From: Haplodiscus bocki
Lineage: Eukaryota
Length of the DNA stretch: 64,000 nucleotides
Assembly (NCBI GenBank): GCA_965655095.1
Contig: OZ296648.1
Span: 164,858,001 to 164,922,000 of the forward strand
Reading direction: 5' to 3'
In this document: positions 5,017 to 63,960 of the stretch, piece by piece
Layout of the letters: each line of letters opens with the position of its first letter
Numbering within the stretch: position 1 is the first letter of the stretch
The notes under the pieces: generated by a model
Database searches by the model: none
Seen by the model: only the letters and a program-made list of their open reading frames with translations
Told to the model about the DNA's origin: nothing
Made by a program: the position numbers and the translations under genes

Positions 5017-6929
5017 CCCGGGTTGACGTCTCAGAGACATTCAGCGCTGATCATCTCTGATTCAGAATACTTTCAGGTCTGTTTCAGCGCTGTTCATTAC
5101 CTGAAAATCTCTGAACAGCGCTGATTCAGCTCTGAACAGCGCTGAAAACGCAAATTTTCAGAGCTAAAAATCAGCGCTGAAACAGCGCTGATTTTTTCTG
5201 AAACAGAGCTGATTCAGAGCTGAACAGCGCTGATTTTCTCTGAAACAGCTCTGAAACTGGAAATTTTCAGAGCAAAAAAAATCAGCGCTGAATCAGAGCT
5301 CTTTCAGTGCTCATTTTCTCTGAAACAGCGCTGATTTTCTCTGAAACAGCGCTGAAAACACAAAAATTCAGAGGAAAAAAAATCTGCTCTGATTCAGAAT
5401 AATTTCAGGTCTGTTTCAGCGCTGTTCATTACCTGAAAATCTCTGAAACAGAGCTGATTCAGAGCTGAACAGCGCTGATTTTCTCTGAAACAGCGCTGAA
5501 AAACCAAAAATTCAGAGCAAAAAAATCAGCTCTGAATCAGTGCTGTTTCAGCGCTGATTTTCTCTGAAACAGAGCTGATAACTACTGAAGCCTTCTGAAA
5601 CAGCTCTTATCATTCCTGATTTTCCCCTGAGACAACGCTGAACAGCCCTGAAATCTGTCTTCCATTTCTTGTCCTCACCGGACTTTTGCAATTTTTCTCC
5701 AGGGAAACTTAGATATTACGCTTTCTGGATAATTATATCTTATTGCTTCTCAGCAAATACCAGATCTTTCATTTTTCGCGAAACTTCTGCAGGAAAGCTC
5801 AAGTCTTACGGTTTCTGGGAATTGCGATCGCATTATTATTCTGCAAAAAACTCTTACTCTCTTTTCGCAGATTTTCTCTAGGAAACCCCAGATCTTCAGA
5901 TCTCTGGAAATTTAGATTTTAGTCTTTTTTCGCAAATTTCTGCGGGAAAGCTTAGCTTAGATTTTACGCTTTCTGGGAATTTAGATAAAATTCCGTTAAG
6001 CCAAAGTTAGATCTTTCTTTTTCCGCTAATTTTCTCCAGCAAACCTCTAATCTTAAGCTCTCTGGAAATTTAGATCTTAGTCTTTTTTCGCAAATTTCTG
6101 CCGGAGAGCTTAGATCATACTTTCCCTGGAAATTTAGAAAATATTCCGTCATGGCAAAAATATATCTTGTTCTCTTTCCGCAAGTTTTTTCCAGGAAACC
6201 CCAGATCTTAAGCTCTCTGGAAATTTAGAGTTTAGTCTTTTGCAAATTTCTGATGGAAATCTTAGATTTTACGCTTTCTGGAAAATAGATCATTCTTTTT
6301 TCGCAAATTTCTGCAGGTAACCTTCCATTTTATATGCTTTCAGGAAAATTATTGCCTATTCCTCGGCAAAATCTAGATCTCAATCATTTTTCATGATTCA
6401 GAGCTGTTCAGGGCTGTTTTCCTCTGATTCAGCGCTGTTCAGCGCTGGTCAAAATTCGTCACATTTTGGTCTGAAATAGTAAAAAAAAAACTATAATTAA
6501 CACAACTTTTGCTTTATTTTCAGTCCACCTTTTACTCAAAACCCTATATTTCAGCCTTTTTACTATTCTACAGGTCACGTACGACCAAGAAGCATGAGGA
6601 AGAGGCGGGTGCGTCAATTCGAATTTTTGACTGGAATTTCGCTGTAATGATTTTTTCATAGCTGGTACACTCCAAAAGAACATGTTTTTCGTGATCCCAA
6701 TACCTTTTCGAACTTACACGAAGCATTTTTGTCGGTTTCTCGATTCGCTTTGATACAGCGCTGAACAGCGCTGATTCAGAGAAAACCAGCGCTGAACAGC
6801 TCTGAAACAGCGCTGATCAGCGCTGGTTTTCTTAACCCATTCTGAAACAGCGCTGATCAACGCTGAAATTTATAAAATCTCTGAAATAGCGCTTTTCAGC
6901 GCTGATTTGCTCTGGGACTTCAACCCGGG
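5017..6929. mobile_element. Non-autonomous TIR DNA transposon, CCCGGG-ended (CMC/EnSpm-like), CAGCGCTG subfamily
   Basis: Left end cccgggttgacgtctcagag; right end ctctgggacttcaacccggg (18/20 inverted match). 2-bp TSD TC/TC. Dense cagcgctg/ctga arrays in both arms. Confidence 0.88.
5690..6385. repeat. Internal ~156-bp tandem repeat inside the CCCGGG element
   Basis: tctctggaaatttaga at 5901, 6059 and 6214; subunits carry cgcaaatttctg and agatctt motifs. Confidence 0.75.
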
Positions 6930-7603
6930 TCGCTTTTTCCTCAAATTGTGATGGGGGTCGAACAGTCATCGAGTAGTTAATCTTGGCGCACGCGTTATCT
7001 ACTATTATCTCAAAATCCCATTGGGAACGAAGTAATTTCGGTTGTATCAGATCAGTTATTTATTTTCGCTTCTTTGGAATTTCGACGTTGTTTTCTCATT
7101 TTCGAAGTTCATGGGAGGTATCAGTTCACCGCCGAATGAACTAATTGATGCTATTTTTACAAAGTAACGCATTGTTGTAACTATTCCCTTGAAAAACAAA
7201 CTGATTAAATTCTTTGACTTGTAATTAGGATTATAAAGCTTCTTGTGAAAGCCTTTCCATAATCGCACTCCGCTATTTCATGGCCGCATTTTTAATCTTA
7301 CAAAAAGTTTTCCTCAATTCAATTAGAGCTCGTCCCTAAAGCACAAATCTTACCATGAAAGGAAATTTTTGCACCGACTTTTGCATTTAGCTTCAAAAGC
7401 GCATCGGCCTCTGTTTCTGCAATTATTTTCTCAAAGCAAGATTCTACCTGTCTGAAGACGTGACGTTTTAGGGGTCCGCTGATTATTTTCGGAGACTCAT
7501 TCATGTGAAATCTTTTCTGCAGTCATAAAATTGTTCAGGAAATGTACACGTGCAATTTACATAATTTACATTTTGTCCCGGATGTCCAGAACATAAGTGG
7601 CGT

Positions 7604-7743
7604 GACTGACGTAATTTCTTGTGACGTCATTTTTTGTTACGTCTGATGACGTCAGAGAAAACGTGGAGCTGCATTAAATTATATCTGCAAAGTAATGGAT
7701 GATGATATCAGCGGGAAAAACGTCTGTCCAATTGAAGGTAAGT
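7604..7743 (+). promoter_or_regulatory. Cluster of CRE-like TGACGT(CA) sites followed by a candidate first coding exon
   Basis: tgacgtaa, tgacgtca, ttacgtc and tgacgtca within ~60 bp. ATG at 7695 gives MDDDISGKNVCPIE, then a G|GTAAGT donor at 7737/7738. No downstream exon identified. Confidence 0.3.
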
Positions 7744-7840
7744 AAAATTATTGATGGTCTGTTATCATTCACAGCTTTTAAGTAATCGGAAAAAAAGTAG
7801 GAAAAAACCTTTCACGAAGGCCAAACTTTCGATTATGAAT

Positions 7841-7927
7841 TATGTACAGAAATGTACAAAATGTAAAAAAATGTAAAAATGTAAAAAATTGTAAAAAATG
7901 TAAAAAATTATGTAAAAAAATGTACAG
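7841..7927. repeat. (A)nTGT degenerate simple repeat
   Basis: About nine copies of tgtaaaaaaa-like units. Confidence 0.8.
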
Positions 7928-7959
7928 ATTAAAACAACGAGCAAACTATAAACAATGGA

Positions 7960-8429
7960 TTATTTGCAGAATAATAAATTGTATTTGAAGTATTCAGGCT
8001 GCTTAACTTGAATTAACTGAGGTAGACTGTGAGGGTAGGTTTCGGTCACCATATGAGAGTTGGTTTCTGCCTCTGGGCTATTGAGTTGACCAGAGTGGTG
8101 AGGAAAATACCCCACTTCGGGATAGGGATCGTTTGAGGAGCGATCCCCATGAGTTTCCCGGTTTTCTGAATTAGCGTTTCCGGACGTTCCTTGAACAGCT
8201 ACGGAACTAGTCCGAACTTGTGGGTTCAGAAGGAACTCGTCAAGTTTCGACAATGCACCCAAAATACGTGACTCAGTTTTGCTAAATTCCTTATCTCCTC
8301 GGAGACTTGGGAGATGTAATCTTGGGTTAACTCAGGGTCAAGTACAGTCTGTCCTCTACTGCTTCTACTGCCTTCGGGCGTTTCTCTTGAAACTGCCGCT
8401 AATTTCTTCTTGTTTCTCAATGTTGCCAT
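7960..8429 (-). pseudogene. 5' part of gag-like retroelement ORF, copy 1 (frameshifted, truncated)
   Basis: MATLRNKKKLAAVSRETP...DYISQVSEEI / EFSKTESRILGALSKLDEFLLNPQVRT... Homologous to 15285-15683. A ~28-nt deletion near 8290 causes the frameshift. The gag identity rests on my recollection of similar N-termini, not on a visible capsid or zinc-knuckle motif. Confidence 0.6.
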
Positions 8430-8629
8430 ATTTCTTGAGGGAAAATCTTGTCAGTGATGAAGACTGAATTTAATTTTATCTTTATTATCAGTAACAATCT
8501 CCCCTTAGTATGAGGGAAAAGTTTTGGTGAATACAAACAGTCAAATGATTTTAAAAGAAAAATGGTACAATACCGGAAGGCTACAATTTATATAATAATA
8601 ATTGTACTTTTATTTCTCCTATTTATACC

Positions 8630-8860
8630 TTTCCTTGGCGGGAAACATAATTGTTTACACGCCAGGTCAAGGTACAAATAGGGAAAAGTACTTGAATCAT
8701 ATTATTTATCAAAGAAAAGGGATGCCGACTCTGGCGGGAAATAAACACCTTTCCGTCCATTTCTTCGTCACGGACCGCGTCTTTCCCATCTTTCGACAGG
8801 AAAAAATACGGTGCGATCCGTCGGAAATGGACATCAAAGTGGTTCTTCCCGCGCCGACAT
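8630..8860 (-). promoter_or_regulatory. Conserved structured 5' leader RNA element (packaging/translation-type), copy 1
   Basis: Outer stems gcgggaa/ttcccgc and tccatttc/gaaatgga enclose a GAAA-tetraloop hairpin (8782-8803). Conserved at 15855-16078 with a compensatory change. Confidence 0.55.
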
Positions 8861-9931
8861 AATAAAAAAAAAGCATAAACAAAAGATCAAAGGTATTTCC
8901 ATACAAGGATTAAATACTATAATACAATCGAAAAACAATCTAAAATATGGAAAAAATGAGGTTTATAATATAAAAGATTCATGATTACAAGCTGCATCAA
9001 TTAAAACCACTGTTTGGAACAAACTAGGCGTATTTCCTAACCCGTTCCATGTTTCTACCAGCTCAGGCCTCACTTTGGCCGGAGCGTTCCGTGGCGGCTA
9101 TGTAGCCGCTTGTAGCACTGCCTTCCGCAGTACTACTGAGGAGAATGATTCTGGTGGCTACGTAGACGTTCCGTGTCCGTCCAAAGTGAAGCGGCGTAGT
9201 AGCACAGCGGATTGGCTGAAATTCTAGTGACGTCACCAGATTAGTTACGACGGATTACATACGGAACAAATATTCACTTTTAAAGTCAAGCTCTGTTCTG
9301 AATAGTCAAGCTATTGAAACCTGTTAAAGCTGTCAATCTAAAAAGATTACTGCACAATCAAAAAGGTGGATTTTTATAATAATTAACTAGATTAATTATA
9401 TAAAATAGCACCTAAATTTAATATAAAAATAGAGTGAATATTCGTTTGCTCCGCATCTAATCCGTCCCAATAAGGATCAGTTCACCAGAATTACACGTAT
9501 CGGATACGTGCTTTTTATGAAATAAATGTTATGGGACGATACGTAACTACTACGTATCGTCCACATAAATTACATGTGTACGTACTAGGTGGATACGTAT
9601 CTACTACGTATCCTTAAATATGAATTAATAAGTGAATCATGCAATAAGTGTTTGAGTAAGTTTGAATGTTTCACAGTTCTTTCCTTCTCGATGGACCTGG
9701 GATGTCTTTTGTTGAGGGGATCGTCTTTCCGCAGGCTTCGCAGACGTGCTGCGACATTGACCTTACCCAGATAATCTCAAGGAGCATCTTAGATAATCTC
9801 GAACGCAGACACGTCCCCGAAGTTTTCGAGTAATTTTGGCCTCAAGCAGTGAGTTACCCGAGAAGTACCCCCTAATGAATTACATGAACTACCTTAGATA
9901 GGATGCCGTTCTATTAATCTATTGTGCAATT

Positions 9932-10611
9932 CCCGGGTCGACAACCCTGTTCAAACATGACGATCATGCTATGACATAGTATGATCATGGTGATTCATAC
10001 TTGCCATGGTAAGATCATGGGAAGATCATGGCATGGTCATCATGTAATATAGCATGATCACGTTATGACCTTCATGGAAGATAGCATGATCATGTCATGG
10101 TTACCATGGTCATTATTAGAACGTCGTCCTGAAGTTAATTATGCAACCACTTTTGTTAATTAGTACCTTGGCGAGAATCTTTCCACTTTTCAACGAAATA
10201 TGTTCAAACAACCCATGAAAACTTTCCGACAGACGTTTACTAAAATGGATCTCTTTCTCAAAATGCCGAAAGCTGTAACTTATATGTCATATTGAAACTA
10301 TTGTTAAATAAGAACTTGCTGTTTGGTTATTGCAGAATCGTTTAATTTTGCTGACTTGGTAGTTCGCAAAAATCCTCTAAAGCCAGTCAGGTGCCATAAA
10401 ATGGTTTTTGCAGCAACTATTTGAATATGAAAAAAATAATCAGTTTTTAAAAAGTATGGCAAACATGATGATCATACCATGATCATGCCATGAATCATGG
10501 CGACCATGTCAGGAAACATGGCCGCCATGCCGTCATCATGGCATGATCATACCATATTTCCCCATGATCAGCTGTGATCATGGAGTGGCAGCCATGTTTT
10601 TCAAACCCGGG
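9932..10611. mobile_element. CCCGGG-ended non-autonomous transposon, CATG subfamily
   Basis: cccgggtcgacaa...tttcaaacccggg; TSD TT/TT. catgatcatg arrays in both arms; unique middle at ~10120-10455. Confidence 0.85.
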
Positions 10612-12229: not shown

Positions 12230-12401
12230 GGACAAAACAAGTCTTGCAAAAATCTTCGAGAACTTTTTTCAAGATCCTGTAATATATTGCATTATTCTTG
12301 CAAAAGTCTTGAAAGATAAACCTTCATCCTGCAAGTTTCCTGCGAAAAATGCATTCACATTGCAAGATTCTTTCAAGAAAAGCATTATTCGTGAAGCTTG
12401 G
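12230..12401. repeat. Short CTTGCAAG-motif MITE-like repeat (degenerate)
   Basis: Clustered cttgcaa/tgcaag/ttcaaga motifs; resembles 17033-17246 in opposite orientation. Ends eroded. Confidence 0.45.
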
Positions 12402-15683: not shown

Positions 15684-17030
15684 TTTTGAAAAGTGGAATT
15701 AATCAGCAGCGTTTTAATACTAAATTGTTTATCATCTTTTTGTACAAGTCGGGAGAAATGCAAGAGTGTCGTTTTCAGGAACACAATTAGAGTTTATTAG
15801 CATCAGTACAATTTTTGTGGTCCATTCGTACTTCAATTTCCTTTATTTAGACCTCTTTGGCGGGAATTATACTAAATGACACGCCAAGTCAGGGTACAAA
15901 TTAGATAAAGTACTTTCATGAATAAAGATCAAAGCGGAAATGCGGACTCTGGAGGGAAATAAACACCATTCCATCCATTTCATCCCTCAAAGGACGCGTT
16001 TTTTCCATCCTTCGATAGAAACAAAACGGACCTGATCCGTCAGAAATGAACTTCAAAGTCTCTCTTCCCGCGCCGATATTTCATTTACAAGCAAACCAAA
16101 GTACATAATTGGAGAAAGTAAATATTTATTTAATCCAAAAAATGAAAAACTTATGATGTTAGCGATGGTTATGGAAAGGGATAAAAAATGGTAATGAAAG
16201 TAAAAATTGATTCTTGCATCTCATAAGTATTGTCCTTCGTTAGTGCATCGGTATTCTTGGTCAGAAATGAGGAGAAACTAGTAGCTCTACTAGTTTACCC
16301 CTCGTTCGCGGGAGTAGCTACTAATAGTTTCTGGAGATTTCTGTCTCGACTAGTAGCGGCAATCAAAATCATTCAAGCCGAGCAGGATTTAGGAGTGAAT
16401 ACGGAGTCACTCAGTATTCATTATAGTATTACGGCACAGCTGAGTGGTCGGAATGGTTTAGACATCACCAGATTGGAAGCGACGGAACTTGTGGAGAACA
16501 AATATTCACTCGTGCAGTCTTTCACGCTGTATCGAGGGACGCTGCTAATTCAGCTGAAGTGTTAAACTGCACTATTTTAACTAGTATTTACTCCAGTCAA
16601 TTAAATTAATCACTCATAAAGGTGGATATATGTTACATAATAATTAAATTGTTACAATTGTAGCACCTTTTGAAAGGAAAAGCTCTGTGATCATTCGTTT
16701 TCCGTAACGGTTTCTTCCTAGTCTGGATCAGTTCACTACCGTGATTGGTAGATAATACGGATCACTTTACATGTACAAAAAGTATGAGTTTTTCTTAAAT
16801 TAAAAATGAAAGTCTAAGTCTCATTCTGAGTCTTTAGATGTTTTTTCTGCAGGCAAGCGTTGACCGCAGTCTTCGCAGGTGTGCTGCGACAATAACGAGA
16901 TAACTGGAGCCAGAAGCCTTCTGGTTGTTTTGAAGTGAGTATGGTTAGTAAGGTTTTTCGAGCAAATTTGTGTGAAAGTATTCGATTTTCAGGTTTGTGT
17001 AAAAGTTTCCTTATCTCTTTGAATTACGGA
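15285..17030 (-). mobile_element. 5' portion of LTR-type retroelement, copy 2 (diverged)
   Basis: Same block order as 7960-9850: ORF, leader 15855-16078, inverted-repeat block 16467-16738, cttcgcag..gtgctgcgaca at ~16871-16891. Confidence 0.55.
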
Positions 17031-17032
17031 TG

Positions 17033-18268: not shown

Positions 18269-19122
18269 CCCGGATTGTCAGCCATGGTTACACAGGCCGT
18301 TCATGTCATGACAAGCCATGATTATGGTAATTCATACTCGCCATGGTGTACTAATGAAAGATCCTTAAATGGTTATCATTCAATATGTTATGAACATGGC
18401 ATGGCTGTCATAGAGTAAAGAAATATTGGATATAGGTGACGACATGGATTTTCTCACGTGCCTTTACTCCATCATTTTTGTGTTCCTTCAGCGAAAAGCT
18501 TCGCCTAAATAGCCGGGTTAGCATTAAAGTCGTTTTTCGGTAACGCGTATCCTGAAGCCGAATGATAGCTAAAAAATCATTCAGTTTTATTTCTTTTGAA
18601 AAAGTCTAAATAATCTCTGGAAAAAATTTGAATCCAATTTGTGATATATTTTACTTCGGAATGAGAAATAGCGTATACAGAAAAGTCTCAAATCGTATCT
18701 TCTTTTATTGATATTCACATGTTATTACCGAAAAGGACTGTGACATTATTCTTTCGATATTAATTAATGGTGCTCTGGATTTGTATGATGCTGAATTCAT
18801 TTTTTCTTGGTCACACTGGAAGCCACGTCCTCACCGTGGGTCCTGGCATGTGTGATACAATTTGTCTCGTTAGCTGAGTTCCTGTTTGAATTTACAGCAT
18901 AAGGACTCTTGTATTGAGATCTGTAAACCTGGTTTACAATAAATACCTGAGAAGTTGAAACAAAAAATGTATAATGGCATACCATGATCATGGCGAAACC
19001 ATAGTAAGAAACATAGTGACCTCAGTAAACAAAAAACATGGCCACCAGTCGATCATACTGGCATGGTAATATCCATGTTTCACTAAAATCATGGCATAGT
19101 GGCCATATTTTCCCAATCCGGG
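18269..19122. mobile_element. CCCGG-ended non-autonomous transposon, CATG subfamily
   Basis: cccggattg...caatccggg (perfect 9-bp TIR); TSD TG/TG. Arms homologous to 9932-10611; middle unrelated. Confidence 0.85.
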
Positions 19123-19239
19123 TGTGACTTAGCAAACAGAAAGACCAATTGCATTGGAAGTTGCTAAAAAGTTAAACTAAAAGAACAATTTCATAGTAAT
19201 ATTTTAGAATATAATATGGTTCCAGAGATAATTTACTAA

Positions 19240-21700
19240 GTTCTTACTGCGGCCCATAGATAATTTGCTAAATATCATCTCTGGTGCAGAGTATTCTTAA
19301 CAAGATCTTGTAGTACGCTTTTTCTCTGACAGTGCTGTGTCCAGAGCTGGACCGTAGAACGTTATTTTTGAGGTAATCAATTTGAGTTAAGTGGGAGAAG
19401 TATAGAGGCCCAATTAAACCCCTTATGATCTGAAGTTTTCTTAAAACATTCTTACACCTTTTTTGTATTAAATTCAATATGTTTGTTCTTTATATAGTTT
19501 AATCGACCTTCGATCACTACCAAAGTAATACTGATACTCGAAGCTGCAAATGATCAGGTGATGCATGCAATTTTGTTAGAGGTTTGCTCAACCGTGTTGC
19601 CATCCATTCTGGTGTCGCAGTCATTGACTTCACTGCTTTTAGTCAAATAGAGCAAATCTCGAATCAAAAACTTTTCCCGGGCGTACCACCATACAAAAAA
19701 CGGAAATCATAGAAAGTCATATATAGAGATCTATGAAAATATTCAAGTCATAGAAAGTACCATAGAAGTTTATGGTAACATGCAAATCATAAAAAGACCA
19801 TACTATAGTATGATTCCATGCAAGTCGTACAATGTACCATAGTGTGGCAATAATATGGAGAACCATGCGCGAATTTTATCAGATTATAATAACATATTCT
19901 AGCGAACAAAAATTTGACTTGAAATACTCATGGAAGATATTACATTAAAGTGTGAAGTTCAAAACTTCTGGCAATAATACAACTGGGGAACATAATAAAC
20001 GCCATCTACATTCATTTTTGTTGCCTAAAATTAAAAATGAGATTTTGTGAAATCCCATTCCCGAAAAGTGCAGTCTACAGTGATGTAGTGTTGGACAAAC
20101 TACGATGAAGGTATAGATCTTTCTTTCCTAGCAATAATACGGAAAGTTAAATTCTGCAAGCTGTTGACGGGCATTCCCTCTGTACCTTGAAGTTTTCCAG
20201 ACTTTTGAATTACTCGGAACTATGTAAATAAGAAATTGGAAGTTGTTTGTTGAAAAAAAACATGAAAATCATTGGATGACAATACAAAATAACATTAAAG
20301 TCATTAACTAACCATACAAGTTTATGGCTGACAGGCTTTCTATACTATGGCCATAGAAGAAAAACAGGAAACTAATGGCATTATCATAAGCTGTTTTTTT
20401 TGTAAGGCAGTTTATGGTGCATAGTATGATTTGCATGGCAGGTCAACCCGGGTTGTTTTTTTTCATGAAAAACTTTTCTGAACAAGAGTTACTTTTCAAT
20501 TGAATGCAAATGGCGTGATTCTCGATAGGTAAGGAAGACTCTCATTGCATTTTCAACTCCTACACCTCAAGATTTTTAGCACCATTTCAAAATTACATGT
20601 AGTTTTTTATCCTCAACAACATCAGTCAACAGGCTGTCCCTGATGCTTACAAGGATACACATTATATTCTGAACTAGTGGTGCAGCGGAAAATAATCATT
20701 GGGCTTGAATGAGATCGAATGTCACCCTCATCTGACGACGCTTTGCATGATAAGTGACCCGAATTGTATCACATTTGAGAGGGTTCAGACAGTTCAGCTA
20801 ATGTTAAATTTGTTAAAAAACCACTTTGGGCTGTTACCACCGTTGTTTTATGTTCTCGCGGTGCCCAAACACGCTATGCTTGAAGTTAACACCGGCAAAG
20901 CCAGGTACTAGACGATTTGAATCATCTTGTCGTTTCCTGAACATCAAGGCCGTTTTCATTAAGTCTCCTTCAATTCTGAACAATAAATATGGTTTTTATG
21001 AAAAGGTCCCAATTTATGGCATAGATTTGAATCTTACATTCCTTTTTGAGTTTGCTTCTAGATAAGCATCATACTCTCCTGTTCGATTTCACAAAAAAAT
21101 ACTACTCGAATTTTTTACCTTTCTGTAGTTTTTGATTCACACCGTTTTTGGGACTGATTAGAAACAACAGATAATGCCGTTGAAGATCCAGTGCCAATTG
21201 ACCTGGTTGGATTATTTGTGAATATATGAATCAATAATTTGGGTGCATGAGAGCTTTTAATCGAATTGAAAAAGTAATTTGCTCCCGTATCATACAGGGA
21301 TATTCCCTTGACACTTATCAGCAACGGTAAAAACCGCTTGCTACTGAGAGTTATATATTTTCAAGCTAGTCTTCATAATTGTAATCGTGGATAAAATTAA
21401 TGAAATATAAGAATATAATTCTATGATTTCTGTTAGATTATACTATTGTTAATCATGCTACCAGGCTAATAATAATCTTACCATATATGTATGTTACCCT
21501 AGCTGACCTTAGCAAGATCAAGTGCGAGATTTTGTATGACTCTTATGGTGCCATATTGTGGTCAGATTGTGATCAAGCTTGTGGGGAAACCCGGATAGTG
21601 ACTTTTATCGCAGACACTCTGAGTGAAGAAAAAAGCGGTCTGGCTTGCAATGACTAATAAATGTATTTAGTTGTAATGAATCTAGGCTTAGTTAGAAACG
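19240..21700 (-). pseudogene. Probable fossil multi-exon gene with very short introns (product unknown)
   Basis: GT-AG segments at 21118-21079 (40 nt), 21037-20976 (62 nt) and 20837-20798 (40 nt) separate GC-richer coding-like blocks. The frame is kept across the first (GQLALDLQRHYLLFLISPKNGVNQKLQKG|EYDAYLEANSKRN) but broken elsewhere. Confidence 0.35.
19676..20452. mobile_element. CCCGGG-ended non-autonomous transposon, CATA/TATG subfamily
   Basis: cccgggcgtaccaccatac...gcatggcaggtcaacccggg; TSD TT/TT. Arms rich in catag/ccata/tatgg. Confidence 0.75.
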
Positions 21701-27305: not shown

Positions 27306-28219
27306 CCCGGGTTGACAACCTTACTACTTTCAGCGATAATCACAGCAACTCCAAATTGGTTTAACAATTCAATTATATTTTTTTTCAGAATGTTTTACAA
27401 CTTATAATTGATGCACATAGCATCAATTTCAATGGAAATCGCTGGTTCAGAGCTAAAACAGCCACGATAAGTGTTATTTCAGAGTAAAAATTCAGCGATT
27501 CTTAGAGCTCAAACAGCTTTTATCAGAACTAAAAGTCTTAGGTCGTCACTGAAAATTATTGAACAACGCTAAACACTTATGAAAATCCTCTTAACGTTAC
27601 TGCAATTGTTTGCGAACCACTTTATGAAAATTGCTTGCTATCCTTCACGGATTCAGAATGGATTAATTCGGCTAAATTCCCTTATTGTTTCTGGAACATT
27701 TCAAAATACCTTAAATTTGGCAGCAAATTCTGATTTTCAGCCCAAATGGCGAGAAAAAAGGAACAACAAAGATTTAGTTGTTCACTCTTTTCACAGGCTG
27801 AAGGTATAACAAAACTTGAACTTTTTTGGTTTATGGTACTGCTCAAGTAACAAAACTGAAACAGTTCAAACTTTTGAAAACGTTTCCCGTTTAGTGGAAT
27901 GAGCTTTTAACATTATTTCGAGAAATTTGAGTTTTTGCTGTCACTTTGTAGAAAATTGGAGAATTTCCAACAAAAAGAATGTGAATTTAAAGACCACTTC
28001 ATGCGTGTTCATCTCATTTATCGCATCTTGGTGTTCTCATCTACACATGCAGATATCAGAGTTGATCCAAAAATCCAAAAAAATATCAGGGCTGATTGGC
28101 TCTGAGATAGCGCTGAACACTGGTCTTATTTTTCGTGTTCTCTGAACCAGTGCTGAAAAGAGTCAAAACTGTGGAACAGCGCTGTTCAGCGCTGAATATC
28201 TCTGGGACTTCAACCCGGG
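27306..28219. mobile_element. CCCGGG-ended non-autonomous transposon, CAGCGCTG subfamily
   Basis: cccgggttgacaacc...ctctgggacttcaacccggg; TSD AT/AT. Right end identical to that of 5017-6929; left arm matches the right arm of 61383-63960, inverted. Confidence 0.88.
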
Positions 28220-28978: not shown

Positions 28979-29978
28979 TTAATATTCTTGTCTAATTTTT
29001 TTCTCTCTTTTTCGAAATTATTCCTGCTGAAAGTCGAGGTGCAATTAACGTCTAGTCACATCATTTAACATCAGGACTGTACTTTATTGGAATCATGATA
29101 AAAATTTCTATCATTCAGTCTTATTTGTAGTCAATTTGCGCATTCACAGTCAACACTCTTTCAATTATCAATTCATTCTGATAACTCCCGATTTCCTAGA
29201 CAAGGTTGCATGCATTTTTTATATGATTTTGTTTGTTACCAAGCACTATTTGAATGATTTTGAACGATTCATATGAAAACTTTGGTATTCCAAGTTTTTT
29301 TTCAATGAATTTTGTAGAATTTGACAGTGTTTCATGAATTAGATGCAAAACATGAATGGCCACAAAATCTTGAGAAAAAATCCAAGTTTTAAGATGGAAC
29401 TAAAGTTATTTTACGTTAAACAGCTCACGTATTTCACCGCGATTTTTCTATTTTAACGCTGCTGTTTTTCCGGTTAGTAACCGCTTCTGTGACTAATTTG
29501 AACGCCGTTCAAGCTTTTATACCTAAAATATTTTAAATCATATTTCGACCCGGGTCCTTAATAAAAAGATAACATAAGTAGGTCTCTTTTTCCTACTTGA
29601 TAATTTTCAACAAAATCGCAATGAACTTGACTTCCGTCGATGAAAAGTCAACTAAGTTCATTAATTTTTCATTTAATTCAAAGACAGTTTTTGTTGATTC
29701 TGAGTCTGCAGAGGGGATTATTATTGTATTTTCCACGTATTCCTATCTTCCTTTCCCTGTCCGTCAAAATTTTATGGACGTGGATGTTCGCTTTTCCCAG
29801 AGGAGCTAATTTTACACGAGATGAGGTTAGATATGGGGACTATGGGGACATTATCAATATGATAAGATGAAAATTAGAATCATGCAAATTTAATAATCAT
29901 CAACTCAAAAAAAATGTGAGGACGAAATGAAGTGGCGCAAAACAACGATATTGAGTATATTGAGGAGGGCTCCCCATG

Positions 29979-32064: not shown

Positions 32065-32264
32065 NNNNNNNNNNNNNNNNNNNNNNNNNNNNNNNNNNNN
32101 NNNNNNNNNNNNNNNNNNNNNNNNNNNNNNNNNNNNNNNNNNNNNNNNNNNNNNNNNNNNNNNNNNNNNNNNNNNNNNNNNNNNNNNNNNNNNNNNNNNN
32201 NNNNNNNNNNNNNNNNNNNNNNNNNNNNNNNNNNNNNNNNNNNNNNNNNNNNNNNNNNNNNNNN
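32065..32264. other. Assembly gap (200 N)
   Basis: Run of N; the round length suggests a placeholder of unknown true size. Confidence 1.
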
Positions 32265-39075: not shown

Positions 39076-39499
39076 ACCGTTTGAATATTTCAGACCAAAA
39101 ACTCAAAACTTTCACGTTTGGCATTAGAGAACAAAACAAAGGAACCGCAAAACCTCAAAGACAATAACTGGAGATGGAGCTTGTAACCAGGAAGAAACAA
39201 AATTAAATTATTTTGAGAGAGGCCTTTAGGTTACAACTGTGAGAACTTCTGCAAGACTCCAACTAGTCAAGTCATAAAATGATCAATTTTTTTGTAAACT
39301 TGCTGGGCCATGGCAAGTTCAATTACACTACCAATGCGGCCACGTTCAGTTCCAGACTCCAGTCCCCTGCAGTTCTCCCACACTTTCGAAGAAATATGCT
39401 CTAAAAGCGTCCTAATCCTCTGTCAAAAAAATGATTGACCATGAGTTTCTCATTCTTCATGTAGTGAGAAATTCAGATTTTTGGTAGATACAAGTTTTT

Positions 39500-39670
39500 T
39501 CTGGTATAACAGCGTTAACGGCGTTCAACCGGAACACTAAAAGCATTAACGGCGTTCCTTGTCGGTATAAAGGCGTTAACGGCGTTTTGCTAGTAAGTAA
39601 ACGGCGTTATCGGCGTTTACGCGATTATAGCGGAAAAATAGCGGCGTTTTCCCAGATAGTTCGACCCGGG
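39500..39670. mobile_element. Orphan right arm of a CCCGGG element, GGCGTT subfamily
   Basis: gcgttaacggcgtt repeated about every 30 bp, ending ttcgacccggg. Left end not found. Confidence 0.65.
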
Positions 39671-53993: not shown

Positions 53994-54070
53994 GTTCTAT
54001 GGCGGGATTTGAACCCGCTACCTCCAGCTTCCGAACGGCGGTGACACCCGACACTTGTATTATACAAGAC
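53994..54070 (-). mobile_element. tRNA-like/SINE head (degenerate; not a functional tRNA)
   Basis: Perfect T-arm gcggg-TTCAAAT-cccgc; weak acceptor and anticodon arms. Related fragment at ~15164-15185. Confidence 0.5.
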
Positions 54071-54327
54071 ACCAACTCCACAGATTTGAATTCTGCGCGT
54101 CATGGGCATTTTCAGCAAAGGGAAAAAAACGCCGACTGCTATATTGAACAATTTCTTTCCGCAAAAACTTTTCAACAGAAAGTAACAATAACGTTGTGAG
54201 AAACTGCTAGTTCAAAACTTCTTCTGTTTTTTAATGTTCTGATTTTTGGCGGAAAAATTTTTGTAAACATCGAAGACAAATACTATTTTCGTCATTCGCC
54301 ACTTGTTTTATATTATACAAGTTATTA

Positions 54328-58000: not shown

Positions 58001-59182
58001 ATGGTTTTTTCGCGGATAGAGTTTGAGTTTTAGGTGGAATTATTGTACATTGAGAAACGTAAACAGTTCCTGTAAATTTTTAATCCCATCTTTTGGCGCG
58101 AAATATGATGATGCTGATTTTGTTCCAATGCATGGATTTTTCCATTTCATACAACATGTCGGAATTTTCGAAAAATGTTTTCTTTGGTAGCAATCGGGCT
58201 TTTTAGTTTCCAACTCTCAACTATGGCACTTTAGAGCCTGGAAGAGGTTTCCATCGGCAAGCCTGATTCAACTTTTTCCATAAATCTTCCACGGGTACTA
58301 CAGCAAGTCTTAGTTTTGTTTTGGGGAAAAAATGAACTATTTTCTGAACTCACTGTTTTTTTCGCCGGAAAAGTTTTCATTTTTTGGCCTTTTTTGTCAA
58401 ATATGACGCTCTAAAGCCTCGAAAGCATTTTAAAGCCGTCTCATTGAGCTCGAGTTTTTAGCTGCGTTGTGTGATTTTGAGTTGGAATTAATTGATGGTT
58501 TTTCTGCAAGTTTTTTTCTACTTTAAATCTATGGTTGAGCTCTTTTTTTCTCTCGTTTATCAAAGTTTTGGAACGTAGATTTGTGTTTTTTTTGTTTTAG
58601 CTAACAACATTACCCAAGGCAATGCCAATAGCATCATAGGTTTTTTGTGTTTCAAAACACTTGCACAGCGCTGGAAATTCTCAAAAAAACAACTAATTCA
58701 GAGGAATCTTGTGAAAGGAACTAAAAATGTCATATTACCCTCATCTAAATCTAAAATTAACCAGCGAAAGTTTCGCTCTTCTCGAGATACTCAAGTACTT
58801 TTTCGCTCTTTCTCAGATAAATTTTTGCACTCTCACTGCGAAACAACGTTATGCGAAAAATTTCCTGCTCAAAGTAGCTGATAAAATTGTGCTGAAAAGC
58901 GTTTCTTTCATTGTAGTGCCTTCATTGCGATATCAGAGGAAGAAAGAGTCTTTTCAAGGCGTCTCTTGACTTTCAACGGACATGTGTTTGGCTTTTTAGG
59001 TATGTTTGGTTGGCGAGTTTTCCAACAATTTCGTTGGCAGCTAAATTATCAAATTTTTGTAACTGCGCCTTTTGTAATTTTTTCATTCATTGCCAGTTTT
59101 CTAGCTCTGAAGACACAGAGGATATGTTTTTGGGCTTTATCAGATTGTTCTTCGCGGCGTTAGTTTTCAGTGGAAATTCAAA

Positions 59183-59677
59183 CAAGACGGCCGGCTACCA
59201 GCGGCATACTTTCCACCCTCCAATTTTGTTGAAGATGCCTTTTAAAAGGATAAAAACGTTTTTTTTTTTAAAAAAAAATTCTTCATATATTTTCTAATTT
59301 TTCCAATTTTTTATTTTTTTTGCGACAAAACATCACGGTTAAGGTGGAAAGGAAGTTTTTGAGAAATTTTATCATTAGATACGCATTCTACAGCAAATTT
59401 TCTACCTTGACCGATTTTGAAAAAATTCAATTATTTTTCGAAAAAGCCATCGTTTTTTTTCAGAAAAAACCCAATATTCCTAAGTTTTGAGAAATCTTAA
59501 TTTTTCAATCGCATTCTACGGCAAATTTGATATAATTTGCCAATCAAAATTTTCCACTGTCAGAACTGTCATTTTCGTCATCATTTTGCCGGACACTGAC
59601 ATTCGGACATCATCAATTGGCAAAAACTTGAAAAAAAAACGTCGCTTTGGGTGGATGATTTTCCGTCCATATTATGA
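59183..59677 (-). mobile_element. Non-autonomous Helitron/Helentron-like repeat, copy 2
   Basis: aa|caagacggccggctaccagcggcata is the reverse complement of the 3' end at 28950-28980; internal gcattctac..caaatt blocks are shared. Confidence 0.6.
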
Positions 59678-60722
59678 AATTAAACGGAAAGTTTCAGTTC
59701 ACCAATATGATATTTTGACCAATCAGAGTAACGTGCCGTGCAGAATACAGCTGTTTTCCCCAGCATTTCATGTGGCCATAGGAATTAATGAACAGGCCTG
59801 TTTTTTTATGACAACATTAATGAATCATCAATGATACCAATGTGTTCTCGAAGGGGGAAGCGATCATAGGAGATATTTCTTTCGAGCCGAAGGAATTGAT
59901 AAATTGAGTTCCTGGACGATCTCATCTCAAGAATGTTTTCGGGATTTTTATTTTAAATGCACTGTAAATGTGTAGCGTCAGTTCAAAAAATGTGTTCTCT
60001 TTGAGTTAATTTGAAAGTGTTTTTTGAGTGTTTTGCTTGAAGGCCTTGAGCTAGATTCCTCTGTCCGTATGTTTTTTGACCTCCATTATTTTTTGACCGC
60101 GTTTTGTGTAGTTCATTGCAATTGTACCACCTCTTTTATTAACTTCCCAAACCTTTAAGGACACACGCCTGAAATATTTTCAGCCTCATGGCAATCGCCA
60201 CTGACGCGTTTTGAGCTGGTTGCCTTTTCTGATTGATTTGTCCATTGGTAGGAATTTTTTAGTTTAGTAAATAGAATGCACTTCTTGCAACATTTTCCGA
60301 ATTTGGGTCCAACTGTAGTCGCTAATTTTACCATTTTTTTGCAAAATCTTAACTAAGATTTTTTCATTCGTGCCGATTTTACACCTATACCATGTCTGGA
60401 ATTTCTAGGAAACTTTAAATGTCTGTGATTGTACCACCTAATTCTGGCGCTACGATGTAACAAACAAAACTCAAAACATGTGTGAACATTTCAAGGTGCG
60501 CCTACGTAGACTGGGTGCATTTTGAGTTAGCTGTCCTAATTTTGCGGTTCTATAACTAGAATACAGTTTTCGCACCATTTGTACACATGTTTTCATCATA
60601 TAGCATTTTGATCCTAGAGATACTCATTCATAACAACTGATGATGAAATGCAGTTTTTAGAGTTAGAAGTGCCTCAAATTTGGTATTACCAAAAACAAAA
60701 GAATTCCACTTCGTTCTACCTT

Positions 60723-60724
60723 TC

Positions 60725-60797
<73 letters not shown>
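60723..60797. repeat. (CT)n microsatellite
   Basis: Direct reading. Confidence 0.97.
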
Positions 60798-60798
<1 letters not shown>

Positions 60799-61382
60799 CT
60801 CTTCTCTTTTTCTCTTTCTCTTTACTGCATGACATTCGTAATATTTTCTGTTTTCTAGTTGAAAAAAAACAATTACACCGAAGTTGTCTTTTCCATTAAC
60901 CTACCTCCACATTTTCCACAGATTTTTTTCTCTCTTTTTCTGTTCACGTGCTGTATAAATTGACTGCCGCTGCAGATTTTTTCCATTCCCATGGCAGGGA
61001 CTGCAGCGTATGTGTGTTATAGTGGAAAAAGTACCTCCATGTCATTCTACCTGAACACACAGAAGGCTTTACATCACGTATTAGTCTATACACTCTTCTA
61101 GCTCTGTTACCGCAATAAGTATTTGCTGTTCTATATATTCCTCATATAATTTTACCATTACTATACCAAGCCACGTGACATTTTTGGTACATGAGCTCAT
61201 CTTGTAGTATAACATTGCTTCAACATTCTTGGGCTCGCTGGTTGTTGCAAAAAAAACGTTATCTCTACTGATTTCATCAATTAAATAATACCCCTTAAAA
61301 TGTACTTTTAAAATGCCAATAGCTTTAAAGTAACCCTGAATTGGTACGCGCAAACTGATATCACAATTTTGAAAGAGCTGTA

Positions 61383-63960
61383 CCCGGGTTGAGCTCTCAT
61401 AAATATTCAGTCATTTTCAGCGCTGATTCAGAGATTTTTGCGTTTTCAGCGATGTTCAGAGCTGAACCAGCCGACTTTAATTTTGACATCTCTGGTCATA
61501 ACTGATTCAGTGATGAACATTTCTGAACATCTCTGATTCAGCGCTGAACATTACTGGCAAGCAGCAAACAGTCAAACACCATGAAAAAAGCCAAAAAAGT
61601 GTTTTTTTTCAATATTAATGCTGAAGAGACGAGAAATCAAAGATTTCAGAATAACTTTTAATGGGTTATTTTGAAAAATTCGAAAAATGTGATTTTTTCC
61701 GAAAAGTGTATTTTCTTTCGATTCCATGTCAAAAGACTTCTTAACAAGAACAAAACCGGTGACAGATACTAAAATACCTCCTGTAATAGGGGAAAAAACG
61801 TTACAGGAGTTATATTTGATGTTTTTACAGTGTTTTTGAAGCGAACATGTAAAGTCTCTGCGCCAGCAATGTTTATGGCTGAATCAGAAGAAATCAGTAA
61901 TGTTCAGAGCTGAATCAGTATTTTTCAGAAATGATGCAGAGAAAATAAGTTATTTTCAGAGCTGATTCAGTATTGTTCAGAATTCATCAGAGTCTATTCG
62001 ACGGAGCAGAATAACGTCTCAGGTTTATTTCCTAATCACATTCTGGGGGGGTCAAGAATTACGTGTAAAGAATAACGTCTAAATCAATTTCGGGAATAAA
62101 ACCTAAAGCCATGCCAAGTTCTTCCAGTATTTTAGTACATTGTGTTTTGGTCGTTATTGATTTAAACGTTACTCTCGAGTGACTTTAACATGTTTTCTTT
62201 TGATGTTTTAGGGGTTCTAGATCTTATTCTGTTTTGATGTTTTAGATCTTTATCCCACTTTGGGGGAGGGGGGATAACATCTGAATCCCCTGCGGGAATA
62301 GCGCCTTAAAGCAAGGTGACGCTCACTCTGTTATGGATTTTTGCCTAACGCGTGTTTAATTTTGTCCTCATTGTTAATTTATTTTGTTTTCTTTTGGGGT
62401 TTTTCTTAAATGTAGTTCATACGAAGTTGACAAAACATAGGTCGAAGACCATTCGGCGATGAAGAGCCGTTGTTCAGAAATGATCAGAGTCTTCGACGGA
62501 GCGGAATCGTCTCAAGTTTTAGTTCCTGCTTTCACTTTGCGGGGGGGGGAAGGTGCGGTGTCAGATGATTTCTTAAGAATAACGTCTAAATCCATTTCGG
62601 GAGTAAAGCCAAAAGTCATGCCAAGCTCTTCCAGTATCTTAGTACAATCTTTTAGGCGCTATTCCCGAGTGACTTATAGTATCCTTTTGATGCTTCAGGC
62701 GTTTGTGGGTGTTATTCCTTTTCGATATTTCAGATCCGGTGTCGTCTCACAGCTCCGAAAAATAAAGTGTAGCTGAACTCCGAAAATTTTTAGTCACGTG
62801 ACCCACGCGGCGTTAGTGTTCGGCGTTCATTTTAAATAACACTTCAACAATATATAATTAACAATTTCCCCAACGTTTTCCTTTAGGGATGGAGAATGCC
62901 AATTCGAAAACCCTGCCAATTTCGTTCGTAAAAGTCCCAAAAAATTCGCAAGAAGCGTGAAAACAAAAACATGAGAAAGAAACTTCACAGTAAGTAAAAA
63001 ATTTCAAGAAATGTTCCTCCAGACATGTATAATGCGGTTTTGATGACTCGGCCAAAAAATTTTCACTCAACATATGACACTTTTAACGATCTTTATTTCC
63101 TCCGACAGAACATTTTTCTCTTCAAAAAATTCCCCCGGCCACCTAGAATTGAAAGTTGACAATACTGCCGAGTGTTTTCTGCTCAAAGTCCAAATTATGA
63201 AAACCTAAAAACTTTTTCAACTAAACTGTTTTGTCCTAATTATTAATTTATTTTCTTTTTCCTTTGGGGTTTTTCTTAAATGTAGTTTATACAAAGTTGA
63301 CATAACATAGGTCGGAGACCAATCAGCTATGAATAGAGCCAATAGAGTTTTTTTGACCGTTTCAGATTTGAAACAGTAGTTTTCAAAAGTGTTCAGTGTT
63401 ATTCAGGCATTTTCAGAGATGACCAGAGATTGTCATAGATGTCCAGAGCAGTTTTCAGACATTTCCAGTAATGTTAAGAGATATTCATAAGTGTTCAGCT
63501 ATGTTTAGGCCTTTTCAGAGATGACCAGAGATTTTCATAGATGTTTAGAGCAGTTCTCAGACATTTTCAGTAATGTTATGAGATTTTCATGAATGTTCAG
63601 CTATGTTCAGGCATTTTCAGAGATGACCATAGATTTTCATAGTTATTCAGCGGTTCGCAGACATTTTCAGTAATGTTCAGAGATTTTCATAGGTGTTAAG
63701 CGATGTTCAGTAATTTTCAGTAATGATCAGAGATTCTCAGTTCTGATAATAGCTGTTTCAGCTCTGAAAATCGCTGAATTCTTACTCTGTAATAACACTG
63801 ATCATGGCTGTTTTAGCTCTGAAACAGTGATTTTCATTGAAATTCATGCAATGTGCATCAATTATCAGTTCTAAATCATTCTGAAAAATCTATTTACATC
63901 GCTGAATCAATCTGGAGTTTCCATGATCATCGCTGAAAGTAGTAAAGACGTCAACCCGGG
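61383..63960. mobile_element. CCCGGG-ended non-autonomous transposon, CAGCGCTG subfamily, with nested insertion
   Basis: cccgggttgag...gacgtcaacccggg; TSD TA/TA. ttcag arrays, including a ~102-bp unit at 63403, 63505 and 63607. Confidence 0.85.
61985..63345. repeat. Nested head-to-tail diverged dimer of another repeat
   Basis: atcagagtct..tcgacggagc at ~61986 and ~62483; ggggtttttcttaaatgtagtt at ~62396 and ~63266. Confidence 0.7.

What the first reader, a model, noticed from the sequence alone, without database searches (positions are those of the whole stretch)
5017..63960. Modular family of CCCGGG-ended, 2-bp-TSD transposons with interchangeable subterminal motif arrays
Seen: six complete elements (5017-6929, 9932-10611, 18269-19122, 19676-20452, 27306-28219, 61383-63960) share a CCCGG(G/A)-type terminus, and each is flanked by its own matching dinucleotide (TC, TT, TG, TT, AT, TA). 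Their arms are built from different short motifs (CAGCGCTG, CATG, CATA/TATG); an orphan arm uses GGCGTTAAC. Known: CMC/EnSpm elements make 2-3 bp TSDs and use subterminal repeats bound by a TnpA-like protein. Inference: one conserved cleavage end has been paired with several diversified DNA-binding codes, implying a radiation of partner DNA-binding proteins. I do not recognise this family as described. This is the best candidate for an undescribed system here.
Basis: partly seen in the sequence, partly recalled or inferred. Interest (0 to 1): 0.75.

Follow-up and report, generated by a model that had tools for sequence, protein, structure and literature searches.

The report
Mirage-type transposons with CCCGGG ends
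The six repeats are real cut-and-paste DNA transposons: short non-coding derivatives of roughly 20-kb elements of the already known Mirage (CMC) group. The unusual part is that their transposase is fused to a histone-methyltransferase-like SET domain.

Summary
All six elements sit at the stated coordinates, end in CCCGG(G/A)...(T/C)CCGGG, and have identical 2-bp flanks (chance 2e-7). In a wider sample from this genome, 19 of 21 automatically paired ends have matching 2-bp flanks.

The elements are not an unknown system. Both arm types of the CAGCGCTG-bearing elements (el1; el5/el6) are the ends of about 19-22-kb elements that encode a DDE transposase matching Pfam DUF1258. The literature equates DUF1258 with the Mirage group of the CMC (CACTA-Mirage-Chapaev) superfamily.
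- el1 is 90% identical over 1.38 kb to the left end of one such element.
- el6 is 98-99% identical to both ends of another. Its left arm lies 11-13 kb upstream of four separate transposase copies.

The transposase is fused to a SUV4-20-like SET domain. Relatives at 36-45% identity in other assemblies often share this architecture. I found no description of it in the papers searched.

No transposase was linked to the CATG, CATA or CGTTAACG families, and arm swapping is not shown.

Verdict: a new variant of a known kind, of moderate interest.

The parts
5017..6929 (+). Element 1. A 1913-bp internal-deletion derivative of transposase lineage I. TSD is TC. The ends read CCCGGGTTGACGTCTCAGAG and CTCTGGGACTTCAACCCGGG.
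   Evidence: Read. Bases 1-1380 are 90% identical to L018:243-1580, the left end of an element carrying the SET+DUF1258 genes. The last 100 bp of its right arm has at least 787 candidate copies; the 39 scored apart from the window's own copy are 96-97% identical.
5017..5616 (.). Left subterminal array of element 1: a dense run of the palindrome TCAGCGCTGA and its variant CAGAGCTG.
   Evidence: CAGCGCTG occurs 14 times in 600 bp.
5858..6284 (.). Internal 158-bp tandem repeat of element 1 (2.8 copies), also present in the autonomous copy L018.
6380..6929 (.). Right subterminal array of element 1 (CAGCGCTG motif).
   Evidence: CAGCGCTG occurs 9 times.
9932..10611 (.). Element 2. 680 bp, TSD TT, arms built of CATGATC/ATGATCAT. 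An old, high-copy family.
   Evidence: Read. At least 2579 candidate copies; full-length copies are 69-74% identical. Its left arm is 69% identical to that of element 3 over 147 bp.
18269..19122 (.). Element 3. 854 bp, TSD TG, termini CCCGGA...TCCGGG, arms of the CATG type.
19676..20452 (.). Element 4. 777 bp, TSD TT, arms built of CCATAG/CATAGA. A homogeneous family of elements about 785 bp long.
   Evidence: Read. At least 2346 candidate copies; full-length copies are 85-87% identical. A second copy with TSD GT is at L042:129-1780.
27306..28219 (-). Element 5. 914 bp, TSD AT. Same family as element 6 but in the opposite orientation. Its left arm matches the right arm of element 6.
   Evidence: Read. 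Left arm is 83% identical over 250 bp to the right arm of element 6. Bases 1-316 are 82% identical to L053:13144-12833.
61383..63960 (+). Element 6. A 2578-bp internal-deletion derivative of the roughly 22-kb lineage II element. TSD is TA.
   Evidence: Read. The 3' 732 bp are 98.6% identical to L053:12413-13144, which ends at a CCCGGG terminus downstream of the SET+DUF1258 genes. The 5' 258 bp hit at 97-98% identity, 11.4-12.7 kb upstream and in the same orientation, at four transposase loci.
63380..63739 (.). 102-bp tandem repeat inside the right part of element 6, shared with the autonomous copy L053.
29400..29554 (.). Orphan right end reading ...TTTCGACCCGGG. No partner end in the window.
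39440..39670 (.). Orphan right arm ending ...GTTCGACCCGGG, built of AACGGCGTT/CGTTAACG motifs. It belongs to a high-copy family.
   Evidence: At least 2534 candidate copies at 90-94% identity. No left partner in the window.

Best explanation
The six elements are non-autonomous cut-and-paste DNA transposons of the Mirage group of the CMC (CACTA-Mirage-Chapaev) superfamily. They make 2-bp target-site duplications.

They keep only the parts the enzyme needs in cis: a terminus of about 10 bp (CCCGG[G/A]TTGA or a close variant) and several hundred bp of subterminal arrays of a short, usually palindromic, family-specific motif. They are moved in trans by transposases encoded on rare master copies about 19-22 kb long.

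That transposase is one protein of about 1000-1100 residues. It has an N-terminal SUV4-20-like SET domain, a disordered linker and a RAG1-like DDE core.

Shown here: the termini, the 2-bp duplications, the copy numbers, the physical link between two arm types and two transposase lineages, and the domain make-up of the protein.

Inferred, not shown:
- The conserved terminus is the cleavage site, by analogy with the RSS heptamer.
- The subterminal palindromes are binding sites read by a dimeric part of the transposase, by analogy with the RSS nonamer or the En/Spm TnpA sites.
- Each motif family has or had its own transposase lineage.
- The SET domain acts on chromatin at the element.
For: - **2-bp duplications.** 6 of 6 in the window and 19 of 21 in the wider sample.
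- **Lineage I link.** Element 1 bases 1-1380 are 90% identical to L018:243-1580. L018 starts with a CpG-decayed terminus (CCCAGGTTGACGTCTCAGAG) and then carries SET and DUF1258/Transposase_21 reading frames. Two copies on different chromosomes (L027+L017 and L018) are collinear at 87-93% from that terminus inward and unrelated outside it. On the C1 copy an element-1-type right arm lies 18.96 kb from the left end.
- **Lineage II link.** Element 6 is 98.6% identical to the right end of L053, which carries the same genes. Its left arm lies 11.4-12.7 kb upstream, in the same orientation, of four transposase copies on C11, C5 and C4 (two copies).
- **Transposase identity.** DUF1258 matches above the Pfam cut-off. 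DUF1258 is equated with the Mirage transposases in PMC3985635.
- **Catalytic residues.** The two D, the CxxC, the DYMH block and the E are conserved.
- **Fold.** The predicted structure matches SUV4-20 SET domains (E 5e-9) and the RAG1 core (E 1e-7). A sequence search of solved structures gives SUV420H1/H2 at E 1e-11.
- **A relative elsewhere.** An element of about 14 kb in another assembly (L054) has a ...CCAACCCGGG right end, a TG duplication, its own palindrome (CCACCGGTGG) and an 847-residue SET+DUF1258 reading frame.
Against: - No transposase was linked to the CATG (elements 2 and 3), CATA (element 4) or CGTTAACG (orphan arm) families. They are placed in the group only by terminus and 2-bp duplication.
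The lengths of 19 and 22 kb come from coordinates, one of them mapped through a second assembly.
- No empty site or insertion polymorphism was seen.
- The termini are CCC...GGG, not the CA...TG / CAC...GTG reported for most CMC lineages (PMC12730594; PMC4079192).
- That Mirage elements make 2-bp duplications is from my own knowledge of Repbase and of Yuan and Wessler 2011. I could not find the statement in the held papers.
- The structure model has only moderate confidence (mean pLDDT 63).
Confidence: 0.82

Rival explanations
1. The elements belong to the ISL2EU / PIF-Harbinger (PHIS) group, the other eukaryotic group known to make 2-bp duplications.
For: 2-bp duplications are reported among Harbinger relatives (PMC12730594). 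SET-carrying Harbingers (HarbingerS) exist.
Against: A search of the whole genome with DDE_Tnp_4 (PF13359) found nothing. Two arm types are physically joined to DUF1258/Transposase_21 genes.
Confidence: 0.03
2. The CATG, CATA and CGTTAACG families (elements 2-4 and the orphan arms) are moved by a transposase unrelated to the SET-Mirage one. They share the CCCGG end and the 2-bp duplication only by convergence.
For: No master copy was found for them. None of their best 40 genomic hits lies near a transposase locus. The left end of element 4 reads CCCGGGCGTA rather than TTGA.
Against: The hexamer and mostly the next four bases are the same, the duplication length is the same, and the arm architecture is the same. 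The genome holds at least four further diverged Mirage-like lineages with no arms assigned, including one with uninterrupted 1016-residue frames. In another assembly the same terminus goes with yet another motif on a SET-Mirage element.
Confidence: 0.12
3. A new transposon superfamily. On this reading the neighbouring Mirage-type genes are only passengers or neighbours.
For: The CCC...GGG termini are unusual for CMC. I cannot name a matching Repbase or Dfam entry.
Against: The same arms flank the gene at five or more independent loci, at constant distance and orientation. Similarity between copies starts exactly at the terminus. The short elements are 90-99% identical to both ends of these units.
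Confidence: 0.03

Closest known systems
Mirage group of the CMC superfamily (MIRAGE1 of Caenorhabditis; Pfam DUF1258, PF06869)
   Same: The DDE transposase matches DUF1258 above the family cut-off, with a weaker Transposase_21 match. Duplications are 2 bp (for Mirage this is from my own knowledge). There are terminal inverted repeats and many non-autonomous derivatives.
   Different: The transposase is fused to a SUV4-20-like SET domain. Master copies are about 14-22 kb long with long internal tandem repeats. Termini are CCCGG(G/A). Placement on a tree next to the nematode Mirage elements was not tested.
CACTA / En-Spm elements of plants, and animal CACTA such as ENS1_Cis
   Same: Same superfamily. 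Short conserved termini plus several hundred bp of subterminal repeats in both orientations. Large master copies with many deletion derivatives. ENS1_Cis-type elements also make 2-bp duplications (PMC6004678).
   Different: CACTA ends in CAC(TA)...GTG and mostly makes 3-bp duplications. En/Spm uses a second protein (TnpA) for the subterminal repeats; no second protein was found here. The match to Transposase_21 is only weak.
RAG1 / Transib and the recombination signal sequence
   Same: The predicted catalytic core superposes on RAG1. [quoted passage not shown] The logic of a cleavage motif at the tip plus a separate binding motif further in is similar.
   Different: Here there are many binding motifs per end rather than one nonamer. 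Duplications are 2 bp rather than 5 bp. There is no RAG2-like partner.
Transposons that carry SET domains: HarbingerS, some Helitrons, the Plavaka accessory gene PAG2, and primate SETMAR
   Same: A histone-lysine-methyltransferase-type SET domain is encoded by, or fused to, a transposon protein.
   Different: Those cases are in other superfamilies or in separate accessory genes. SETMAR is a host gene that captured a mariner. Here the SET domain is N-terminally fused to the transposase itself and is conserved across a deep clade.

Membership tests
CMC superfamily, Mirage group | Transposase matches the Mirage profile (Pfam DUF1258, PF06869) above its gathering score | tested here: met
   Nine genomic hits, seven above the cut-off. 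Single reading frames score 35.9-41.6 bits against a cut-off of 33.1. Of eight relatives scanned, seven score 35-52.5 bits and one 32.9. DUF1258 is equated with Mirage in PMC3985635.
CMC superfamily, Mirage group | [quoted passage not shown] | tested here: met
   LFTDGV, LVADL, GCCYC and ANE are conserved across five loci of two lineages; the sixth, L022, covers only the first two and has variant residues. They are invariant in 13 full-length relatives, at D540, D624, C643/C646 and E777 of P0005.
CMC superfamily, Mirage group | H(3-4)H motif of the CMC/Transib signature | tested here: inconclusive
   An invariant DYMH block (D715-H718) and H657 are present. I did not map them onto the published motif with reference sequences.
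CMC superfamily, Mirage group | 2-bp target-site duplication | tested here: met
   6 of 6 and 19 of 21. That this is the Mirage value rests on my own knowledge.
CMC superfamily, Mirage group | Termini 5'-CA...TG-3' (CAC...GTG), as in most CMC lineages | tested here: not met
   The termini are CCCGG(G/A)...(T/C)CCGGG. The papers say 'in most cases', so this is typical rather than strictly defining.
CMC superfamily, Mirage group | Short elements share both ends with a unit that encodes the transposase (elements 1, 5 and 6) | tested here: met
CMC superfamily, Mirage group | Short elements share both ends with a unit that encodes the transposase (elements 2, 3, 4 and the orphan arms) | tested here: inconclusive
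   None of the best 40 hits of each family lies near a transposase locus. Only 40 of more than 2000 candidates are scored per search.
CMC superfamily, Mirage group | Placement on a tree with reference Mirage rather than CACTA or Chapaev transposases | not tested
   No named reference sequences were at hand. The only proxy is that DUF1258 scores above Transposase_21 and that DUF1280 (Chapaev) is not among the reported matches.
CMC superfamily, Mirage group | RAG1/Transib-like catalytic fold | tested here: met
   Foldseek hits to RAG1 cores at E 1e-7 to 1e-5 over about 560-620 columns. The model has moderate confidence.
ISL2EU / PIF-Harbinger (PHIS) | Transposase of the DDE_Tnp_4 type | tested here: not met
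   No match to PF13359 in the whole genome.
Tc1/mariner | Duplication is always TA | tested here: not met
   Only 2 of 23 duplications are TA.

The most novel reading that the evidence does not exclude
A deep and so far undescribed clade of animal Mirage-type transposons whose transposase is permanently fused to a SUV4-20-like (H4K20-type) SET domain.

The clade keeps one cleavage terminus (CCCGG[G/A]TTG) while the palindromic subterminal binding motif changes from lineage to lineage (TCAGCGCTGA, CATGATCATG, CGTTAACG, CCACCGGTGG), in step with the transposase. Sister lineages would therefore not cross-mobilise each other's short elements.

The SET domain would mark chromatin at the donor or target site as part of transposition, or to control the element.
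Probability: 0.3. Interest if true: 0.6.

Novelty: new variant of a known kind. Interest (0 to 1): 0.45.

Why it matters
- **For annotation.** More than ten thousand candidate copies in this 1.5-Gb genome, in five arm families with about 800 to 3300 candidates each, can be filed under CMC-Mirage rather than 'unknown'. Two master-copy lineages are located.
- **For transposon biology.** A transposase with a built-in SUV4-20-like methyltransferase domain, conserved across many paralogues and at least three assemblies, would be a natural case of a mobile element carrying its own chromatin writer.
- **For DNA recognition.** Sister families with the same tip but different palindromic motifs offer a natural test of how DNA recognition and cleavage are split in RAG1-like enzymes.

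Tried and rejected
- **Transposase_21 (PF02992) genome search.** Only two weak hits.
- **DDE_Tnp_4 (PF13359) genome search.** No hits, so the ISL2EU/Harbinger reading was rejected.
- **A 4.8-kb pair of ends at C1:9477573-9482420.** Looked like a possible master copy. It is one orphan end plus a 446-bp short element.
- **Fetching 20 full copies and the right end of the C1 master copy.** No master copy of this genome was read end to end and its duplication was not checked.
- **Sequencing runs, to look for empty alleles.** I did not try another route.
- **Paralogous empty sites among the held loci.** None found.
- **A nested insertion in L042 as an empty-site test.** The inner element is truncated and the host copy too diverged for a clean junction.
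- **Inverted repeats around the transposase in L015, L016 and L019, and in five foreign loci.** Found only in L054, because the ends lie beyond 10 kb.
- **Protein atlas.** It gave CMC-type families for the DDE part and nothing for the SET-containing frame.
- **Literature.** No paper in the library states the Mirage duplication length or its termini, and none describes a SET-Mirage fusion.
- **The two longest reading frames in the window.** No Pfam match.
- **Arm swapping ('interchangeable' arms).** Rejected as unnecessary.


Full report
**What is in the window.**
Each begins CCCGG(G/A), ends (T/C)CCGGG, and is flanked by the same dinucleotide on both sides: TC, TT, TG, TT, AT, TA.

Two random dinucleotides of this window agree with p = 0.0765, so six agreements out of six has p = 2e-7. 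CCCGGG occurs 15 times in the window against about 2 expected from base composition. The 11-mer CCCGGGTTGAC occurs 3929 times in the genome against 92 for its reversed control.

Two further right ends have no partner, at 29549-29554 and at 39665-39670.

The assembly gap at 32065-32264 lies in none of these features, so its continuity does not affect any of them. I did not try to fill it.

**The duplication is 2 bp and is a general property.**
I used a simple rule: a CCCGG core, with orientation set by TTGA or TCAA on the inner side. I paired neighbouring left and right ends in the window and in about 30 other places of the genome fetched with a 446-bp copy as query.
- 19 of 21 pairs have identical 2-bp flanks.
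- 1 of 21 pairs has identical 3-bp flanks.
- 4 of 21 pairs match at the next dinucleotide outward, used as a control.
- The binomial p for 19 of 21 is about 1e-19.

The duplicated dinucleotides vary, and the reconstructed targets show only A+T richness.

**Families and ages.**
The arms fall into groups.
- Both arms of element 1, the right arm of element 5 and the left arm of element 6 share the palindrome TCAGCGCTGA.
- The left arm of element 5 and the right arm of element 6 are 83% identical over 250 bp. Elements 5 and 6 are therefore one family with two unlike ends, lying in opposite orientation. No exchange of arms needs to be assumed.
- Elements 2 and 3 share CATGATC/ATGATCAT arms.
- Element 4 stands alone, with CCATAG/CATAGA.
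- The two orphan ends share CCCGGGTCGAA. The 39670 arm is dense in AACGGCGTT/CGTTAACG; the 29554 end has only isolated copies.

Each family is abundant. The counts are candidates of the tool's first look, and the identities are for the roughly 40 copies that were scored.

| Family | Candidates | Identity of scored copies |
|---|---|---|
| 446-bp relative of element 1 | at least 3352 | 75-93% |
| Last 100 bp of the right arm of element 1 | at least 787 | 96-97% |
| Left arm of element 6 | at least 817 | 96-98% |
| Orphan arm | at least 2534 | 90-94% |
| Element 4 | at least 2346 | 85-87% |
| Element 2 | at least 2579 | 69-74% |

This looks like successive waves of amplification.

**The partner transposase.**
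The window has no reading frame longer than 142 residues. Searching the whole genome with Pfam profiles gave two weak hits for Transposase_21, none for DDE_Tnp_4, and nine for DUF1258. DUF1258 is described as the Mirage group of transposases, close to Transposase_21/CACTA, in PMC3985635.

One of these loci, L018 on C12, begins at position 243 with CCCAGGTTGACGTCTCAGAG. This is the left end of element 1 with one CpG-type change, and it is preceded by TA. Element 1 aligns to L018:243-1580 at 90% over its first 1380 bases, including the 158-bp internal tandem repeat. L018 then carries SET and DUF1258 reading frames on the other strand.

A second copy on C1 (L027 plus L017) is collinear with L018 at 87-93% from exactly that terminus inward, and unrelated outside it. 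On C1 an element-1-type right arm (97% identical) ends at 189943344, which is 18,961 bp from the left end at 189924384. Element 1 is therefore a deletion derivative of a master element of about 19 kb, which I call lineage I.

**A second lineage with its own arms.**
A public contig that is 99.8% identical to the C11 locus (L053, ENA ERZ26859043) runs further downstream. It passes a tandem repeat of roughly 590-bp period spanning about 4.8 kb and the 102-bp repeat also seen in element 6. It ends at ...GTAAAGACGTCAACCCGGG.

The last 732 bases of element 6 are 98.6% identical to this end. The first 258 bases of element 6 hit at 97-98% identity, in the same orientation, upstream of four separate lineage II transposase copies:

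| Left-arm hit | Transposase copy | Distance upstream |
|---|---|---|
| C11:23712796 (+) | C11:23724338 (+) | 11.5 kb |
| C5:55199292 (+) | C5:55210702 (+) | 11.4 kb |
| C4:66190116 (-) | C4:66177390 (-) | 12.7 kb |
| C4:55125814 (-) | C4:55113817 (-) | 12.0 kb |

Mapping L053 onto C11 gives an element of about 21.9 kb. Elements 5 and 6 are thus derivatives of lineage II. Its transposase is 61-63% identical in protein to that of lineage I.

**The protein.**
Five loci of lineages I and II and a partial third (L022) share the blocks LFTDGV, LVADL, GCCYC, DYMH and ANE. These correspond to the two catalytic D, the C(2)C, a His motif and the E of CMC-type enzymes. Their stop codons lie at different places, so the copies decayed independently. 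One copy (L015) keeps an open 654-residue frame.

A SET domain lies upstream in the same orientation at every locus examined. In L015 and L016 it is separated from the DDE exon by a stop-rich, T-rich stretch of about 270 nt that looks like an intron. In L022 both domains are in one frame.

The word-based protein search found 37 relatives. Most hits at 36-45% identity are 750-1100 residues long. Thirteen of the 37 carry PF06869 plus PF00856 in one protein. All but eight weak hits come from unnamed ENA assemblies.

An alignment of 13 of them has an invariant SET block (RF.NSDC.PNC ... GDE..VKY ... C.C..C) and an invariant catalytic set. A structure predicted from this alignment has moderate confidence (mean pLDDT 63). 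It shows a folded N-terminal part (about 40-260), a disordered linker (261-402), a helical region (414-469), an RNase-H-like core with a helical insertion, and a C-terminal beta-rich domain.

Foldseek matches the N-terminal part to SUV4-20 (KMT5B/C) H4K20 methyltransferases (E 5e-9, target TM 0.62-0.64). It matches the rest to RAG1 cores (E 1e-7 and weaker). By sequence, the best solved relatives of the N-terminal part are also SUV420H1/H2 (E 1e-11). The His of the usual NH.C motif is Ser here, so methyltransferase activity is not assured.

**Relatives elsewhere.**
- In another assembly (L054, ERZ25074608) an element of about 14 kb carries an 847-residue SET+DUF1258 frame. It ends ...TTCCAACCCGGG and has a decayed matching left end. 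It is flanked by TG on both sides, and its arms are built of yet another palindrome, CCACCGGTGG.
- In a third assembly, a 570-bp short element (L056:19969-20538) has CCCGGA...TCCGGG ends, an AA duplication and the TCAGCGCTGA motif.
- The terminus, the 2-bp duplication and the family-specific subterminal motif therefore go together beyond this genome.

**How it most likely works.**
The transposase excises and reinserts any DNA bounded by two proper ends, making staggered cuts 2 bp apart at the target.

The tip, which stays the same between families, is most likely what the catalytic core recognises and cuts. The dense subterminal motifs, mostly 8-10-bp palindromes, are most likely bound by a dimeric DNA-binding part of the same protein. 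They would serve to load and pair the ends, as the nonamer does for RAG1 and the TnpA sites do for En/Spm. These two steps are inference.

The spread of transposase copies at about 85, 62, 55, 44, 37 and 31% identity to one copy fits one lineage per motif family. This spread includes a group with uninterrupted 1016-residue frames at four or more places. The fit is shown only for lineages I and II, whose arms are themselves related. What the SET domain does is unknown. Marking chromatin at the element is the obvious guess.

**Comparison with what is known.**
This is a Mirage-type CMC element by transposase profile, catalytic signature, fold, duplication length and architecture.

It departs from the usual description in four ways:
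- its CCC...GGG termini (CA...TG 'in most cases' for the wider clade in PMC12730594; CAC...GTG for Chapaev in PMC4079192);
- the size of the master copies;
- the absence of a recognisable second protein;
- the SET fusion.

SET domains are reported in HarbingerS, in some Helitrons and in a Plavaka accessory gene. I found no report of one fused to a CMC transposase, but I could not consult Repbase or Dfam.

**Limits.**
- No master copy of this genome was read from end to end.
- The families of elements 2, 3 and 4 and of the orphan arms are assigned by their ends only.
- The placement within CMC rests on profile scores, not on a tree.

Noticed in passing
window 9480-9610: A dense array of ACGTATC / GATACGT motifs (7 in 300 bp), just upstream of element 2 and not bounded by a CCCGGG end. 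It is possibly the arm of a different transposon.
   Followed up: partly
G000 C12:23948358, C4:79627473, C2:24981343, C8:66707410 and others: A family of Mirage-like genes only about 31% identical to the lineage II transposase, with uninterrupted 1016-residue frames at four or more places. It is a candidate for a lineage that is still intact. Its ends were not read.
   Followed up: no
L053:7330-12100; L055:10700-20149; L056:15800-18984; L057:13800-16000: The large SET-Mirage elements carry kilobases of internal tandem repeats: a period of roughly 590 bp in L053, and a satellite more than 9 kb long containing GGCAAAA in L055. GATA-type microsatellite arrays lie 0.8-2.6 kb downstream of the gene in L056 and L057. 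This may explain the size of the elements.
   Followed up: no
L054:2288-2478 and 16569-16756: Just outside the ends of the roughly 14-kb element, the two flanks are inverted repeats of each other (69% over 195 bp). It looks as if the element landed inside another inverted-repeat element.
   Followed up: no
L042:129-1780: An element-1-type copy is nested about 65 bp inside an element-4-type copy. The younger family has therefore inserted into the older one. The inner copy is truncated.
   Followed up: partly
whole window: The window holds 4 exact CCCGGGTTGAC ends, against a genome average of about 0.17 per 64 kb. This is a local density roughly 25 times the mean, with members of at least four families. 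I did not test whether it reflects target preference or regional retention.
   Followed up: no
G000 C7:21577150, 21579916, 21582808: Three copies of the orphan-arm family lie in the same orientation at a spacing of about 2.8 kb, which suggests a tandemly repeated unit that contains this arm.
   Followed up: no
L060:1155-19367: In a foreign assembly, a repeat ending ...GCAATTTTCCGGG occurs 13 times around a SET-Mirage gene, all in one orientation. It is a tandem or dispersed array of one element end.
   Followed up: no
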